From Octopus bimaculoides (lineage: Eukaryota): a stretch of 50,279 nt of DNA. This document shows positions 8,542 through 31,242 of this stretch, piece after piece. Made by a program: the position numbers and the translations under genes. Every line of letters begins with the position of its first letter. The first letter of the stretch is position 1. The notes under the pieces were generated by a model, which worked only from the letters and a program-made list of their open reading frames with translations, ran no database searches and was not told where the DNA came from. The stretch lies in the NCBI RefSeq assembly GCF_001194135.2, contig NC_068994.1, positions 13,143,754 to 13,194,032 on the forward strand, written 5' to 3'.

Positions 8542-9932
8542 ATGTCTGAACAGAAAGAGTCATGGAATAAAGAAGAGTCCTTTGTTTGTGAAGTTTGTGG
8601 GGAAACCTCCCCTTCACAAGACATGTTTATTAAACATGGAGAGCTGCACAAAACACAGAAAGGTAGTAACAAAAATAATTCTTGTGAATCTGTTTCAACA
8701 TTCTCTACACTTTTACCTCAATACATTAAACACGGAGAGACGAATAAAATGGAGAAAGGTAGTAACAAGGCTATTTCTGAATCTGTTTCAAAATTGACTT
8801 CACTTTTACCTCAATATATTAAACATGGAGAGTTAAACAAAGGAGAAAAAGATGATAACAAAGATACTTCTGAATCTGTTTCAACACTGTCTTCACTTTT
8901 ACCTCAATANNNNNNNNNNNNNNNNNNNNNNNNNNNNNNNNNNNNNNNNNNNNNNNNNNNNNNNNNNNNNNNNNNNNNNNNNNNNNNNNNNNNNNNNNNN
9001 NNNNNNNNNNNNNNNNNNNNNNNNNNNNNNNNNNNNNNNNNNNNNNNNNNNNNNNNNNNNNNNNNNNNNNNNNNNNNNNNNNNNNNNNNNNNNNNNNNNN
9101 NNNNNNNNNNNNNNNNNNNNNNNNNNNNNNNNNNNNNNNNNNNNNNNNNNNNNNNNNNNNNNNNNNNNNNNNNNNNNNNNNNNNNNNNNNNNNNNNNNNN
9201 NNNNNNNNNNNNNNNNNNNNNNNNNNNNNNNNNNNNNNNNNNNNNNNNNNNNNNNNNNNNNNNNNNNNNNNNNNNNNNNNNNNNNNNNNNNNNNNNNNNN
9301 NNNNNNNNNNNNNNNNNNNNNNNNNNNNNNNNNNNNNNNNNNNNNNNNNNNNNNNNNNNNNNNNNNNNNNNNNNNNNNNNNNNNNNNNNNNNNNNNNNNN
9401 NNNNNNNNNNNNNNNNNNNNNNNNNNNNNNNNNNNNNNNNNNNNNNNNNNNNNNNNNNNNNNNNNNNNNNNNNNNNNNNNNNNNNNNNNNNNNNNNNNNN
9501 NNNNNNNNNNNNNNNNNNNNNNNNNNNNNNNNNNNNNNNNNNNNNNNNNNNNNNNNNNNNNNNNNNNNNNNNNNNNNNNNNNNNNNNNNNNNNNNNNNNN
9601 NNNNNNNNNNNNNNNNNNNNNNNNNNNNNNNNNNNNNNNNNNNNNNNNNNNNNNNNNNNNNNNNNNNNNNNNNNNNNNNNNNNNNNNNNNNNNNNNNNNN
9701 NNNNNNNNNNNNNNNNNNNNNNNNNNNNNNNNNNNNNNNNNNNNNNNNNNNNNNNNNNNNNNNNNNNNNNNNNNNNNNNNNNNNNNNNNNNNNNNNNNNN
9801 ACAACAAAACGCCTTTTATCTGACCACACAAGAACACATACTGCAGATGGTCCTTATCCCTGTCAACTTTGTGGCGAAATCTTTTCTCAATATACAGATA
9901 TAGTAAAGCATTTAGCAATACACACTGGCTGA
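8542..9932 (+). CDS. C2H2 zinc-finger protein ZNF-A: single large coding exon, middle 8910-9800 unsequenced
   Basis: ATG 8542 MSEQKESW..., then canonical finger CEVC-x12-HGELH (8587-8649) and 31-aa repeats. After the gap: TTKRLLSDHTRTHTADGPYPCQLCGEIFSQYTDIVKHLAIHTG-stop (TGA 9930-9932). Upstream acceptor TTATTGTATTTTTCAG ends at 8282 and is conserved in ZNF-B. Confidence 0.9.
8629..8909 (+). repeat. 93-bp / 31-aa coding tandem repeat (at least 3 units) in ZNF-A
   Basis: GAATCTGTTTCA recurs at 8686, 8779 and 8872. Unit is ESVS(T/K)xxxLLPQYIKHGE(T/L)NKxEKxxNKxxS. It runs into the gap. Confidence 0.95.
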
Positions 9933-10769
9933 GGAACGTATTGTCATGAGGTTTACAAGCAGAGGATTTGATGAAGTAAAGAACTTTTCTTGGCATACAA
10001 AAATACATGCAATCAAAAGAATTTAGACTTTTAATTTTGTGTGTGAGGGCATATTGGATATAAATTCATTCATTTGGACACAAATACATAAGAGATAAAC
10101 TTTTCTGCCTGAGTAAGATATTTCTTTTTTTTCTCCTGTCCATTGCTTGATGAGGTTACCCAATTAAATTGTTCTAGTAGATGGTCACTTTGAAGTTCTA
10201 AAGAAGCAAAAATAAGGCAAGACATTCAAGAATGACATAGGAATTTCATATCAAAAAGATTTTTTTTTTTTTGTATACAAGATGGAATATTGAAATGCCA
10301 TTGTTGAATTTATGAATATAACAAGACTGAAAGAAACTTCTGAGACTTTTTTGAATTTTGAGTAGTATGGCTACATGGTGACTGGTAGTATGGCTACATG
10401 TTGAAGTTATGGTAGAAAAAAAAACCAAGGATGGACATGAATAATCAGGGAGCCAAATATTAAGGAATTTCTATCTTTACATGAGTGTTGCAGTGAGTAG
10501 TTGTAGAATTCACAATATGGTTTCTGTTCCATGGTGAAACCACTTCATTCATTTAAACTGGAAAATGGCCTTAAAAAGGCATGAATATCACAGCATCTTT
10601 TCACCTTGTATTTTAAATATTGCAAGCTGCATATTTATGCAGGAGACCACTATATAAATAATTCAACCCTGTAAATCATTTAGCAATGCACTTACACATG
10701 ATATATACATTCCTCCCCCACCAGCACCACCACACACACACTATATTTATATAGTGTAAATAAGTGCAG

Positions 10770-11150
10770 GGTTGGCTGTGTGCTTTCCGATCAGGTGGTT
10801 TTGTGTTCAGTCCTACTGTGTGTCACCTTGGGCAAGTGTCTTCTGTTATAACTGTGGGCTGATCAAAGCCTTGGGTGTAGATTTGGTAGCTGGAAACTGA
10901 AGGAAACTTGTCATGTGTGTGTTCCCTTGTCTAGGCATCCACATTGATAGTTGTAAATAAGTGTCATCCTCATACAGAGTGTGTCCTTCATTTCCAACTT
11001 GCCATGGAAACACCTCTGGTGATAGGTAAATGTTACCTTGTTTGGAAAGAGATGAGAGTTGGTGACAGGAAGGGTATCTGACCATAGAAAATCTGCTTTG
11101 CCAAATTCCTTCTAACCTATGCAAGCATGGAAAAGTGGATGTTAAAATGA
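10770..11150 (+). mobile_element. tRNA-derived SINE plus RTE-like tail (degenerate)
   Basis: 'ggctgtgtg...gttcagtcctactgtgtgtcaccttgggcaagtgtcttct...caaagccttg...gatttggtag.tggaaactgaa' is shared with 41771-42132 and 49858-50170. It ends in 'aggaagggtatctg...catggaaaagtggatgttaaaatgatg'. Confidence 0.7.
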
Positions 11151-28684: not shown

Positions 28685-28904
28685 TTAAACCTTTATCATC
28701 CAGATTTCTCTGTCAAATGTAACGTTAGTTTATTCACATTGATATGAATAAGTCCTTGTAGCTTTGAGATTTCAATGACGTGATTGTTTATTTTTAGAAT
28801 AATATTGTAATGTAAATGTGAGAGGCTGGATCTGGCCAGTTTGAAGATAAAACAGGTACATTATTTTTGCTGGATATGGATTGTTTAAATGCTAAAAGGG
28901 TTAA
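28685..28904. mobile_element. piggyBac-type MITE (second copy)
   Basis: Shares its body with 27594-27817 ('gatctggc.agtttgaa.ataaaaca...aaatgctaaa(a)gggttaa'). Confidence 0.7.
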
Positions 28905-29954
28905 GGGACATTTTTGCCATTCTGGAATATAACATGTCTCCCTGCATCACAATGTTAAAATCCTCTCAAAACATGAAACCTAATTATTTATTCTCAAATG
29001 TTTCTTGATCTACTTTGCCCAAAATACCCTTCCATCATCAACACACATTTCATTTTCATTCACTTGTATTACACCAACAAACTGGTATAATTATCTTGGT
29101 TGTCATGACAAGGAATTGAAATTGCATTATGGTTTCACCTGCTAACCACTGCAACACATGCCATAATACTTATATAATGACAGTAATTCCTCTCTGATAT
29201 GTTATGTCCTTCCTTGATTTCTTCGACCATAACTTCACTAATGTCTGCCGTTATACAACTCCAAATTCAACAATTTTCAGTGGTTTCTTTCAAAGTTTTG
29301 TTACATTCATAACGTCAGCATTGGCATTTCAATATTTCATCTTGTGTGAAATAAAAAACCCCACCAAAAAAAAAAAAAAAATTCAGATATGGGAAAATTT
29401 TTCGCTGTGATAATAATAGTCCCAGGAGAAAATACGCCTCACAAACAAATGTATGAAAACAAATAAAGCTATGAAGAATGTCACTGGACTGTAGGGCGCA
29501 TGTATTTCTGAATCACTGTACGTTGTCAGCAGTGAATAATGAATTCACCTTTCACAGCCCTATAGCAAAGTGCTTGGGAGTAATCAACTACTCCTGTGGT
29601 TGAATATAATTATATTTTATTCAATGCTGCTTTCTGTGACTAGTTATTTATTTAATTCCAGCATAACTGTGTTTAATGCATGTCAGTAAATGTATTATTT
29701 ACTTTTCTTATAAAATATCAAAGTTACTGTAGAACAATTTAATTGGGTGACCTCATCAAGCAATGGACAGGAGAAAAAAAGAAATATCTTACTCAGGCAG
29801 AAAAGTTTATCTCTTATGTATTTGTGTCCAAATAAATGAATTTATATCCAAATTAAAAGTCTAAATTCTTTTGATTGCATGTATTTTTGTATGCCAAGAA
29901 AAGTTCTTTACTTCATCAAATCCTCTGCTTGTAAACCTCATGACAATACGTTCC

Positions 29955-31242
29955 TCAGCCAGTGTGTATTGCTAAATGCTTTACTATATCTGTATATTGA
30001 GAAAAGATTTCGCCACAAAGTTGACAGGGATAAGGACCATCTGCAGTATGTGTTCTTGTGTGGTCAGATAAAAGGCGTTTTGTTGTGAATGCTTCACCAC
30101 ANNNNNNNNNNNNNNNNNNNNNNNNNNNNNNNNNNNNNNNNNNNNNNNNNNNNNNNNNNNNNNNNNNNNNNNNNNNNNNNNNNNNNNNNNNNNNNNNNNN
30201 NNNNNNNNNNNNNNNNNNNNNNNNNNNNNNNNNNNNNNNNNNNNNNNNNNNNNNNNNNNNNNNNNNNNNNNNNNNNNNNNNNNNNNNNNNNNNNNNNNNN
30301 NNNNNNNNNNNNNNNNNNNNNNNNNNNNNNNNNNNNNNNNNNNNNNNNNNNNNNNNNNNNNNNNNNNNNNNNNNNNNNNNNNNNNNNNNNNNNNNNNNNN
30401 NNNNNNNNNNNNNNNNNNNNNNNNNNNNNNNNNNNNNNNNNNNNNNNNNNNNNNNNNNNNNNNNNNNNNNNNNNNNNNNNNNNNNNNNNNNNNNNNNNNN
30501 NNNNNNNNNNNNNNNNNNNNNNNNNNNNNNNNNNNNNNNNNNNNNNNNNNNNNNNNNNNNNNNNNNNNNNNNNNNNNNNNNNNNNNNNNNNNNNNNNNNN
30601 NNNNNNNNNNNNNNNNNNNNNNNNNNNNNNNNNNNNNNNNNNNNNNNNNNNNNNNNNNNNNNNNNNNNNNNNNNNNNNNNNNNNNNNNNNNNNNNNNNNN
30701 NNNNNNNNNNNNNNNNNNNNNNNNNNNNNNNNNNNNNNNNNNNNNNNNNNNNNNNNNNNNNNNNNNNNNNNNNNNNNNNNNNNNNNNNNNNNNNNNNNNN
30801 NNNNNNNNNNNNNNNNNNNNNNNNNNNNNNNNNNNNNNNNNNNNNNNNNNNNNNNNNNNNNNNNNNNNNNNNNNNNNNNNNNNNNNNNNNNNNNNNNNNN
30901 TGAAACAGATTCAGAAGTATCTTTGTTATCATCTTTTTCTCCTTTGTTTAACTCTCCATGTTTAATATATTGAGGTAAAAGTGAAGTCAATTTTGAAACA
31001 GATTCAGAAATAGCCTTGTTACTACCCTTCTCCATTTTATTTGTCTCTCCGTGTTTAACGTATTGAGGTAAAAGTGTAGAGAATGTTGAAACAGATTCAC
31101 AAGAATTATTTTTGTTACTACCTTTCTGTGTTTTGTGCAGCTCTCCATGTTTAATAAACATGTCTTGTGAAGGGGATGTTTCCCCACAAACTTCACAAAC
31201 AAAGGACTCTTCTTTATTCCATGACTCTTTCTGTTCAGACAT
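29955..31242 (-). CDS. C2H2 zinc-finger protein ZNF-B, inverted paralogue of ZNF-A; middle 30102-30900 unsequenced
   Basis: ATG 31242. Visible N-terminus matches ZNF-A except I->V. C-terminus CGEAFTTKRLLSDHTRTH-TADGPYPCQLCGEIFSQYTDIVKHLAIH-TG-stop (29955-57). 93-bp repeats at 31098, 31005 and 30912. Acceptor AG at 31537-31536. Confidence 0.9.

What the first reader, a model, noticed from the sequence alone, without database searches (positions are those of the whole stretch)
8542..31242. Palindromic ZNF pair with a near-identical core inside diverged flanks: signature of arm-to-arm gene conversion
Seen: the first 342 coding nt differ at only 4 sites (3 synonymous, 1 I->V). The visible C-terminal CDS is identical. 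The 3'UTR is near-identical (one 18-bp indel, 2 substitutions, a T-run length difference) up to a sharp boundary at 10176/29730, after which similarity drops to roughly 70%. The 5'UTR/acceptor region is only about 80-88% similar, with large indels. Inference: an old inverted duplication whose coding exon is being homogenised across a ~19.5-kb spacer, as in Y-chromosome palindromes. This would be a concerted-evolution mechanism inside a cephalopod ZNF cluster.
Basis: partly seen in the sequence, partly recalled or inferred. Interest (0 to 1): 0.75.

Follow-up and report, generated by a model that had tools for sequence, protein, structure and literature searches.

The report
Inverted zinc-finger gene pair, converted core
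Two copies of a zinc-finger gene face each other about 19 kb apart and are about 99% identical from the start codon to the end of the 3'UTR but only about 80-85% identical just outside, which is the ordinary footprint of one gene copy overwriting the other (gene conversion), seen here in a gap-ridden draft assembly.

Summary
Arm A (+, 8153-10533) and arm B (-, 31667-29109) are collinear inverted copies of a C2H2 zinc-finger gene.

- **Core:** the visible core has 6 substitutions and 2 indels in 703 aligned nt. That is 4 of 342 N-terminal coding nt, 0 of 132 C-terminal coding nt and 2 of 224 3'UTR nt.
- **Flanks:** the homologous flanks differ at 15-20% of aligned sites. A change-point test puts the low-divergence tract at A 8515-10179 (LLR 69; 0 of 300 permutations reach it).
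- **Selection excluded:** synonymous sites (dS 0.031) and the core 3'UTR (0.9%) are as alike as the rest of the core.
- **Copy into an unrelated site excluded:** the flanks are truly homologous (z 15-23).

Non-reciprocal transfer between old paralogues (interlocus gene conversion) is the best reading.

Caveats:
- About 55% of the core lies in N gaps, so frame and identity there are unknown.
- The inverted arrangement rests on one exactly 100-N join.
- No independent assembly, outgroup or species identification could be obtained.
- The Y-palindrome analogy fails: the arms are 2.4-2.6 kb against an 18.6-kb spacer, and identity is not arm-wide.

This is a known kind of event and of modest interest.

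The parts
8153..10533 (+). Arm A: the full extent of detectable homology with arm B (gene plus ~390 nt upstream and ~360 nt downstream)
   Evidence: BLAST 8153-8883 vs 31667-30901 and 9801-10215 / 10264-10533 vs 30086-29109. Shuffle controls give z 14.6-22.6 inside, z 0.2 beyond 8153 and z 2.4 beyond 10533.
29109..31667 (-). Arm B: inverted, collinear counterpart of arm A. The two genes converge (3' ends point into the spacer).
8515..10179 (+). Low-divergence core of arm A (maximum-likelihood tract). The 5' edge lies somewhere in 8515-8606; the 3' edge is at 10175-10179.
   Evidence: 7 mismatches in 729 aligned columns inside vs 115 in 655 outside. LLR 69; 0 of 300 permutations reach it.
29730..31270 (-). 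Low-divergence core of arm B
   Evidence: Counterpart coordinates from the alignments
8542..8909 (+). Arm A, N-terminal coding part: ATG, one weak C2H2 finger, then 31-aa (93-nt) tandem units running into the gap
   Evidence: ORF; zf-C2H2 16.9 bits, below cut-off; TRF period 93, 3 copies, 8629-8909
30901..31242 (-). Arm B, N-terminal coding part. An in-frame TAA lies 8 codons upstream of the ATG.
8910..9800 (.). Assembly gap inside gene A (891 N, estimated length). It presumably hides more 93-nt units and the finger array.
   Evidence: the flanking sequence is tandemly repetitive
30102..30900 (.). Assembly gap inside gene B (799 N), at the same place in the gene as the gap in A
9801..9932 (+). 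Arm A, C-terminal coding part: end of one C2H2 finger plus a complete finger, then stop TGA 9930-9932
   Evidence: zf-C2H2 39.2 bits vs cut-off 25.2; identical to B 30086-29955
29955..30101 (-). Arm B, C-terminal coding part (15 nt more visible than in A) with stop TGA
9933..10175 (+). Arm A 3'UTR inside the core. ATTAAA at 10163-10168 is the only poly(A)-type hexamer. The identity cliff lies 8-12 nt after it.
   Evidence: 2 substitutions in 224 aligned nt, an 18-nt indel and a T-run indel; hexamer scan
29730..29954 (-). Arm B 3'UTR inside the core; shared ATTAAA at 29743-29738
8153..8514 (+). Arm A diverged 5' flank, non-coding (a frame-breaking 1-nt indel between the arms). Counterpart B 31271-31667.
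   Evidence: 81-85% identity in alignable blocks, K2P 0.17-0.19
10245..10533 (+). Arm A diverged 3' flank. Counterpart B 29109-29395.
   Evidence: 80-82% of ungapped columns, K2P 0.23, z 17.7
23236..23335 (.). Exactly 100-N gap in the spacer. It is the only link between the contig carrying arm A and the contig carrying arm B.
   Evidence: the left edge ends in a (TA)n run

Best explanation
Two paralogous copies of a C2H2 zinc-finger gene arose by an old duplication; flank divergence is about 0.17-0.23 substitutions per site. As assembled, they lie in convergent orientation about 19 kb apart. Much later, a stretch of about 1.66 kb was copied non-reciprocally from one copy onto the other, or onto one of them from a third paralogue. 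That stretch runs from about the start codon to the end of the 3'UTR. The transfer reset its divergence to about 1%.

Inferred mechanism: a double-strand break in one copy was repaired by synthesis-dependent strand annealing on the inverted paralogue, without crossover. A crossover would invert the spacer and would not homogenise the copies.

Inferred cause of the sharp edges: heteroduplex extension and mismatch-repair surveillance stop where the partners are already 15-20% different and riddled with indels.

Inferred recurrence: homologous repair is strongly suppressed at about 17% divergence. The core was therefore probably kept similar by earlier rounds, while the flanks escaped conversion.

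Shown: the mosaic and its statistics. Inferred: the repair pathway, the recurrence and the direction of transfer.
For: 1. **Mosaic of identity.** The core has 7 mismatches in 729 aligned columns, against 115 in 655 in the flanks. LLR is 69, and 0 of 300 permutations reach it.
2. **Not selection.**
   - dS is 0.031 (3 synonymous changes over 97.5 sites). The core 3'UTR has 2 changes in 224 nt. Flank K2P is 0.17-0.23.
   - Fisher synonymous vs flank gives p = 8e-5, and core UTR vs flank gives p = 4e-13.
   - Synonymous sites and core UTR do not differ from each other (p = 0.16).
3. **Flanks are truly homologous and collinear.** z is 22.6, 14.6 and 17.7 against shuffles. Within the window they match only each other. 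The young core therefore sits inside an older duplicate.
4. **Identity follows position.** The same 93-nt unit is 97-100% alike between arms, but units within an arm are only 57-80% alike. A whole stretch was copied; this is not repeat turnover.
5. **Two distinct core sequences exist.** There are 6 substitutions, an 18-nt indel and a 1-nt indel, each core continuous with its own flank.
6. **The same reasoning is established elsewhere.** Examples are the C. elegans hsp16 inverted modules and col-12/col-13 (PMC3966223). Gene conversion has been proposed for cephalopod protocadherin arrays (PMC9068888) and is noted as a general property of ZNF genes (10.1101/2022.11.29.518450).
Against: - There are only two sequences and no outgroup or sister-species locus. 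The phylogenetic signature of conversion is untested, and neither direction nor donor can be told.
- About 55% of the core is unread (gaps 8910-9800 and 30102-30900).
- This is a short-read-style scaffold with 10 N runs in 50 kb. All four core pieces lie at contig ends. Bubble-popping or gap-filling could have removed some true differences.
- The mosaic could also arise if the flanks, rather than the core, were overwritten from other paralogues.
- One event suffices; recurrence is not shown.
Confidence: 0.7

Rival explanations
1. Assembly artefact. The near-identity of the core, or the existence of a core in one arm, was produced by the assembler. Possible routes are a collapsed repeat placed twice, cross-filling of contig ends with reads from the other copy, or allelic variants shared out between two arms.
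For: - The scaffold is heavily gapped (10 N runs, 9.7% N).
- Every core piece sits at a contig end next to a gap.
- Identical runs of 117 to 235 nt or more are longer than typical k-mers, so assigning variants to arms needed read-pair information.
- No independent assembly could be found.
Against: - An assembler merges only sequences that are already nearly identical. It cannot turn 17% divergence into 1%.
- Both arms show continuous sequence across both cliffs into arm-specific flanks. An artefact would need four chimeric junctions that are all collinear and correctly oriented.
- The two cores differ by 6 substitutions and 2 indels, so they are not one contig used twice.
- A haplotig is excluded. 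Homology ends after 2.4-2.6 kb and the flanks differ by 15-20% with large indels.
Confidence: 0.1
2. The mosaic is real but the palindrome is not. The two copies are paralogues that exchanged sequence, but their inverted orientation and ~19-kb spacing come from a scaffolding join.
For: - The contig with arm A (9801-23235) and the contig with arm B (23336-30101) are linked only by a gap of exactly 100 N.
- Every other gap in the window has an irregular, estimated length.
- The left edge of the join ends in a (TA)n microsatellite and the right edge is unrelated sequence.
- From general knowledge, a round 100-N gap is the usual placeholder for a join of unknown size, for example from proximity-ligation scaffolding.
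Against: Nothing in the sequence contradicts the join. A decayed third ZNF in the spacer (21260-22772) fits a local ZNF cluster. This rival overlaps with the best explanation: the conversion inference survives it.
Confidence: 0.2
3. RNA-templated conversion. A reverse-transcribed, 5'-truncated cDNA of one copy recombined with the other copy, so the tract ends at the mRNA 3' end.
For: - The 3' cliff (10175-10179) lies 8-12 nt after the only poly(A)-type hexamer of the 3'UTR. That hexamer, ATTAAA 10163-10168, is shared by both arms.
- The 5' edge lies within 8515-8606, around the start codon.
- Reverse-transcriptase-bearing elements are present in the window (RVT_1).
Against: - The coincidence is post hoc, at about 4% for a random edge within the ~600 nt between the stop codon and the end of homology.
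- About 0.6 such hexamers are expected by chance in an AT-rich 243-nt UTR, so ATTAAA may not be a real signal.
- There is no poly(A) remnant at the cliff in either arm.
- No intron lies inside the tract whose loss could show cDNA origin.
- There is no transcript evidence.
Confidence: 0.05
4. No transfer at all. Either purifying selection on the mRNA kept the core alike while neutral flanks diverged, or a recent duplication covered only the core.
For: - dN/dS is low (0.085), and the tract roughly matches CDS plus 3'UTR.
- Partial duplications restricted to ORFs are a recognised confounder (PMC3966223).
Against: - Synonymous sites are about six times less diverged than the flanks (p = 8e-5), and the non-coding core UTR even less so. 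Selection on protein cannot do this.
- A recent core-only duplication would land in unrelated sequence. Here both flanks are collinear homologues at 80-85%.
Confidence: 0.04

Closest known systems
Interlocus (ectopic) gene conversion between linked paralogues, recognised by a near-identical tract inside diverged duplicated flanks. Examples: C. elegans hsp16-1/hsp16-48 inverted modules and col-12/col-13 (reviewed in PMC3966223), and human G-gamma/A-gamma globin (from my own knowledge).
   Same: - Old duplicates with a tract of about 99% identity that includes non-coding sequence.
- Sharp edges to the tract.
- Flanks far more diverged than the tract.
- It occurs between adjacent copies in either orientation, including tail-to-tail.
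   Different: - Here the flanks are still alignable (80-85%). This rules out the partial-recent-duplication caveat that PMC3966223 raises for the worm cases.
- No sister-species confirmation is available.
- More than half of the tract is unread.
- The spacer (18.6 kb) is larger than in the worm examples (0.4-1.8 kb).
Arm-to-arm gene conversion in Y-chromosome palindromes (P1-P8; PMC8600007)
   Same: Inverted repeats on one chromosome whose similarity is attributed to intrachromosomal non-crossover conversion.
   Different: - From general knowledge, Y palindrome arms are roughly 9 kb to 1.45 Mb, more than 99.9% identical along their whole length, with spacers that are short relative to the arms.
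- Here the arms are 2.4-2.6 kb and the spacer is about 8 times longer.
- Only a ~1.66-kb core is about 99% identical; the rest of each arm is 80-85%.
Homogenisation in cephalopod tandem gene arrays (protocadherins; PMC9068888) and the rearrangement and conversion tendency of C2H2 ZNF genes (10.1101/2022.11.29.518450)
   Same: A lineage-specific multigene family in which gene conversion is invoked to explain the similarity of paralogues.
   Different: - Those papers infer conversion from species-specific clustering in trees, not from a mapped tract.
[quoted passage not shown]
- The origin of this window could not be verified.

Membership tests
Interlocus gene conversion tract | A tract of significantly higher identity than the surrounding homologous sequence (GENECONV-type criterion) | tested here: met
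   Change-point tract A 8515-10179: 7/729 vs 115/655 mismatches, LLR 69, 0 of 300 permutations reach it. Fisher p = 8e-29.
Interlocus gene conversion tract | Elevated identity also holds at silent and non-coding sites, so it is not due to selection | tested here: met
   dS 0.031 and core 3'UTR 0.9%, vs flank K2P 0.17-0.23
Interlocus gene conversion tract | Flanks are homologous and collinear, so the young tract lies inside an older duplication rather than being a fresh partial copy | tested here: met
   z 14.6-22.6 against shuffles. The flank blocks match only each other within the window.
Interlocus gene conversion tract | Phylogenetic incongruence: the tract groups paralogues within a species while the flanks group by orthology | not testable with these tools
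   No related sequence could be retrieved.
Interlocus gene conversion tract | Both copies and their junctions verified independently of the assembly | not testable with these tools
   No reads and no second assembly. The exact-ORF look-up across the 3' cliff found nothing.
Y-type palindrome with arm-to-arm conversion | Inverted arms in cis | tested here: inconclusive
   Inverted as printed, but the two arm-bearing contigs are joined only through a 100-N gap.
Y-type palindrome with arm-to-arm conversion | Near-identity uniform over the whole arm, ending at the arm boundary | tested here: not met
   Only about 1.66 kb of each 2.4-2.6-kb arm is about 99% identical; the rest is 80-85%.
Y-type palindrome with arm-to-arm conversion | Long arms relative to the spacer | tested here: not met
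   Arms 2.4-2.6 kb; spacer 18,575 nt.
C2H2 zinc-finger gene | C2H2 finger domains above the Pfam gathering score | tested here: met
   The C-terminal 48 aa score zf-C2H2 39.2 bits vs 25.2, in two stretches. The N-terminal finger scores only 16.9 bits.
C2H2 zinc-finger gene | One continuous open reading frame with a tandem finger array | tested here: inconclusive
   The array would lie in the N gaps. As printed, the frames do not join in either arm, but gap lengths are estimates.
Cephalopod ZNF cluster | Sequence comes from a cephalopod genome | not testable with these tools
   No informative homologue or matching contig was found. The best hits to the N-terminus are generic (a moth C2H2 protein and a bacterial TPR protein).
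Cephalopod ZNF cluster | Several ZNF genes side by side | tested here: met
   Two copies plus a decayed ZNF relic with stops at 21260-22772 on the - strand.

The most novel reading that the evidence does not exclude
The tract is bounded by the mature transcript: its 5' edge is at about the start codon and its 3' edge is 8-12 nt after the only shared ATTAAA. One copy would then have been overwritten through a reverse-transcribed cDNA of its paralogue. This would be RNA-templated gene conversion as a homogenising route in a ZNF cluster rich in retroelements.
Probability: 0.05. Interest if true: 0.55.

Novelty: new member of a known kind. Interest (0 to 1): 0.25.

Why it matters
If it survives long-read validation, this is a cleanly mapped conversion tract in a lineage-specific C2H2 ZNF family, with both edges resolved to tens of bases.

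- **Effect on dating.** Paralogue dating by coding or synonymous distance, as used to time ZNF and protocadherin expansions (PMC9795677), would underestimate the age of such pairs. Here the error would be roughly 6- to 20-fold.
- **Effect on trees.** Phylogenies of these families can be misled by mosaic genes of this kind.
- **Limits.** It changes no concept. Interlocus conversion between adjacent paralogues, in either orientation, is textbook. One pair in a gapped draft assembly is an anecdote until it is counted genome-wide.

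Tried and rejected
**Searches that led nowhere**
- The repeat finder on the whole window was swamped by N-run self-matches. I replaced it with my own BLAST.
- The N-terminal 122 aa had no hit in the 5.8-bn word-indexed database. The exhaustive HMMER search gave only generic hits, with the best E-value 1.4e-9 (a moth C2H2 protein and a bacterial TPR protein).
- The C-terminal 48 aa had no candidates.
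- The RT fragment, tried for species identification, gave nothing at E <= 1e-5.
- An exact-product look-up of the 51-aa ORF spanning the 3' cliff, meant as an independent check of the junction, found nothing on record.
- An exact 29-mer from the core found 0 hits in metagenome contigs.
- Rfam found no family in the window.
- A sensitive BLAST for longer arms found only microsatellite and interspersed-repeat noise. The exception is two short, weakly collinear blocks, A 12072-12201 vs B 28280-27936.

**Readings rejected**
- **Haplotig:** homology ends after about 2.5 kb and the flanks are 15-20% diverged.
- **Purifying selection:** silent sites are as alike as the rest of the core.
- **Recent core-only duplication:** the flanks are homologous.
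- **Retrocopy:** there is no poly(A) remnant and the flanks are homologous.
- **Arms as terminal inverted repeats of a large transposon:** identity is highest in the middle of the arms, not at their ends.

Full report
**What the window is**

The window is 50,279 nt, AT-rich (about 35% GC), and broken by ten N runs totalling 4,902 nt. It looks like a short-read scaffold of an animal genome. It carries these elements:
- mariner-type transposase fragments (Transposase_1, 43.5 bits);
- a LINE-type reverse-transcriptase fragment (RVT_1, 35.9 bits);
- many microsatellites and a 300-400-nt interspersed repeat family.

No Rfam family is present. I could not establish the organism. Searches with the N-terminal 122 aa, the C-terminal 48 aa and the RT fragment returned nothing informative. 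No exact ORF product or 29-mer was on record in the assembly and metagenome collections.

**Checking the observation**

A self-BLAST that ignores Ns shows one strong inverted pair:
- A 8445-8883 vs B 31336-30901 (95.5%);
- A 9801-10176 vs B 30086-29730 (94.4%, the deficit being mostly an 18-nt indel);
- a weaker block, A 8153-8330 vs B 31667-31488 (81%).

More sensitive settings chain these into collinear arms, A 8153-10533 and B 31667-29109. Base-by-base alignment confirms each statement of the finding:
- There are 4 differences in the first 342 coding nt. Sites 8607, 8742 and 8757 are synonymous; 8725 gives I->V.
- The 132 visible C-terminal coding nt are identical and end in TGA in both arms.
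- The 3'UTR has 2 substitutions, an 18-nt indel and a T8/T7 difference.
- A sharp break lies at A 10175|10176 = B 29730|29729.
- The flanks beyond the core are 80-85% identical in alignable blocks and rich in indels.

**The gaps, tested first**

- Both genes are interrupted at the same place, A 8910-9800 and B 30102-30900.
- The sequence running into the gaps is tandemly repetitive, with 93-nt units (TRF). The sequence coming out of them starts in the middle of a C2H2 finger. The unread part is presumably more units plus the finger array, which is what short reads fail to assemble.
- As printed, the N- and C-terminal frames do not join in either arm (offsets 2 and 1 modulo 3). The anchor-to-anchor distances differ by 103 nt.
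- N-run lengths are estimates, so none of this shows either a frameshift or continuity.
- Continuity is supported by the fact that two separate scaffolding decisions gave the same order, strand and approximate spacing.
- Only 703 aligned nt of an estimated 1.66-kb core are actually seen.
- A third gap (23236-23335) is exactly 100 N, while all the others have irregular lengths. It is the only link between the contig carrying arm A (9801-23235) and the one carrying arm B (23336-30101).
- By common convention, a round 100-N gap marks a join of unknown size. The inverted arrangement and the 19.5-kb spacing therefore rest on that one join.

**Is the contrast more than chance or selection?**

- A three-segment likelihood scan over 1,384 ungapped aligned columns places the low-divergence tract at A 8515-10179. 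It has 7 mismatches in 729 columns, against 115 in 655 outside. LLR is 69, and the best of 300 permutations reached 10.6.
- The 5' edge can lie anywhere between the last flank mismatch cluster (8513-8514; one more at 8535) and 8606. The 3' edge is at 10175-10179.
- Nei-Gojobori counting on the 471 visible coding nt gives dS 0.031 (3 of 97.5 sites) and dN 0.0027.
- The non-coding part of the core has 2 differences in 224 nt. The flanks have K2P 0.17-0.23.
- Synonymous sites differ from the flanks at p = 8e-5, and the core UTR differs at p = 4e-13. Synonymous sites and core UTR do not differ from each other (p = 0.16).
- The low divergence is therefore a property of the whole stretch, not of constrained positions.
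- The flank homology is real (z 22.6, 14.6 and 17.7 against shuffles). It stops at 8153 (z 0.2 beyond) and fades after 10533 (z 2.4).
- Within the window the flank blocks match only each other, so they do not look like copies of an interspersed repeat.
- The same 93-nt unit is 97-100% alike between arms, while units within an arm are only 57-80% alike. The similarity is positional.

**What it is**

The gene consists of:
- an ATG (8542 / 31242). Arm B has an in-frame TAA 8 codons upstream, and a 1-nt indel between the arms breaks the frame upstream, so the 5' flank is non-coding;
- one weak C2H2 finger;
- at least three 31-aa units that look like finger remnants without cysteines;
- an unread middle;
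- two terminal C2H2 fingers (zf-C2H2 39.2 bits vs cut-off 25.2);
- a 243-nt 3'UTR.

The N-terminal region has no specific relative in 1.84 bn representative proteins. The spacer holds a third, decayed ZNF with stop codons (21260-22772, - strand), so this is a small ZNF cluster.

**How it most likely arose**

An old duplication produced the two copies. Much later, non-reciprocal transfer copied about 1.66 kb across, either from one copy to the other or from a third paralogue. That is interlocus gene conversion.

The inferred pathway is non-crossover repair of a double-strand break by synthesis-dependent strand annealing on the paralogue. A crossover between inverted copies would only invert the spacer.

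The sharp edges are what is expected where the partners are already 15-20% different and interrupted by indels. Immediately after the 3' cliff homology continues only weakly (z 2.9), and B then carries about 260-330 extra nt.

Homologous repair is strongly suppressed at such divergence, which is established knowledge. It is therefore reasonable, though not shown, that the core was kept alike by repeated events while the flanks escaped.

Direction cannot be determined. At 8725 and 8757 arm A carries the state shared with the neighbouring units, so arm B's changes look derived since the last event.

**Rivals**

- **Assembly artefact.** This is the main worry, because all four core pieces sit at contig ends and identical runs reach 235 nt.
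  - An assembler merges only near-identical sequence, so it cannot create 99% from 83%.
  - Both arms read continuously across both cliffs into their own flanks.
  - The two cores differ at eight places.
  - I put this rival at about 0.1.
- **Haplotig.** Excluded by the short extent of homology and the flank divergence.
- **Selection alone, or a recent core-only duplication.** Excluded by the silent-site and flank-homology tests respectively. PMC3966223 raises the core-only duplication caveat for worm cases where the flanks are unalignable; here the flanks align.
- **Scaffolding artefact for the arrangement.** This is compatible with the conversion reading. The pair would be real while the 'palindrome' is a scaffolding construct (about 0.2).

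**An oddity**

- The only poly(A)-type hexamer in the 3'UTR, ATTAAA at 10163-10168, is shared by both arms. It lies 8-12 nt before the 3' cliff. The 5' edge is at about the start codon.
- The tract therefore roughly equals CDS plus 3'UTR up to a plausible cleavage site. This would fit RNA-templated (cDNA) conversion.
- The coincidence is post hoc, at about 4% for a random edge.
- About 0.6 such hexamers are expected by chance in this AT-rich UTR.
- There is no poly(A) remnant and no transcript evidence.
- I keep it as the most novel reading not excluded (about 0.05).

**Comparison with what is known**

The pattern is the classical signature of interlocus conversion between adjacent paralogues. 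It is documented for inverted and direct pairs in C. elegans, such as the hsp16 modules and col-12/col-13 (PMC3966223). From my own knowledge it also holds for the human fetal globin genes.

Gene conversion has been proposed for cephalopod protocadherin arrays (PMC9068888). It is also mentioned as a general nuisance in ZNF alignments (10.1101/2022.11.29.518450).

The Y-palindrome comparison (PMC8600007) does not hold:
- identity is not uniform across the arms;
- the arms are short;
- the spacer is about eight times the arm length.

**Verdict**

This is an ordinary kind of event, nicely delimited but seen through a gapped assembly and without an outgroup. If validated, its practical consequence is that coding or dS-based dating of such paralogues (as in PMC9795677) would underestimate their age several-fold. 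Interest is 0.25; novelty is 'new member of a known kind'.

Noticed in passing
window 21260-22772 (- strand): A decayed C2H2 zinc-finger relic sits in the spacer. Several recognisable fingers are interrupted by stop codons and non-finger sequence, and a 74-nt tandem repeat lies at 21868-22020. It is not closely related to the A/B pair.
   Followed up: partly
window 25407-26028 (+) and 43398-43697 (-): Mariner/Tc1-type transposase fragments. The first scores Transposase_1 at 43.5 bits. The second scores the Mos1 HTH domain at 23.1 bits, just under the cut-off.
   Followed up: partly
window 38957-39343 (+): Reverse-transcriptase fragment of a LINE-like element (RVT_1, 35.9 bits).
   Followed up: partly
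window 41775-42096 / 50168-49857 / 32409-32787 / 10731-10922: An interspersed repeat family of about 300-400 nt, 65-84% alike. Related repeat sequence lies just beyond the ends of both arms (A 10731-11160; B 31670-32117), so insertions may have eroded the original extent of the duplication.
   Followed up: no
window 23796-24137 / 24753-25079 (direct, 83%) and 12723-12825 (inverted): Another repeat family with two direct copies about 950 nt apart, just upstream of the mariner fragment.
   Followed up: no
window 5885-6049 and 46832-46969: Self-complementary stretches (hairpin-forming palindromes) of 166 nt (92%) and 138 nt (84%). The second abuts an assembly gap.
   Followed up: no
window 8449-8470 vs 31331-31314: The candidate splice acceptor is not conserved between the arms. 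A has TTTACAG where B has TTTACAA. B has TTTGCAG about 12 nt upstream, where A has TTTGCAA. Each arm keeps exactly one of the two AGs.
   Followed up: no
window 8725-8757 (B 31059-31027): Three of the four coding differences cluster within 33 nt of the second 93-nt unit. At two of them arm A matches the neighbouring units, so arm B looks derived. This could be a multi-nucleotide mutation or a short patch copied from another paralogue.
   Followed up: partly
window 8629-8909 and 30901-31155: The N-terminal 31-aa tandem units (LLPQYIKHGExNKxEK...) resemble the histidine/linker half of C2H2 fingers that have lost their cysteines. The region has no specific homologue in the protein libraries.
   Followed up: partly
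window 12072-12201 vs 28280-27936: Two short, weakly collinear inverted matches (76-80%) lie about 1.5 kb inside the arms. They may be remnants of a once longer duplication.
   Followed up: no
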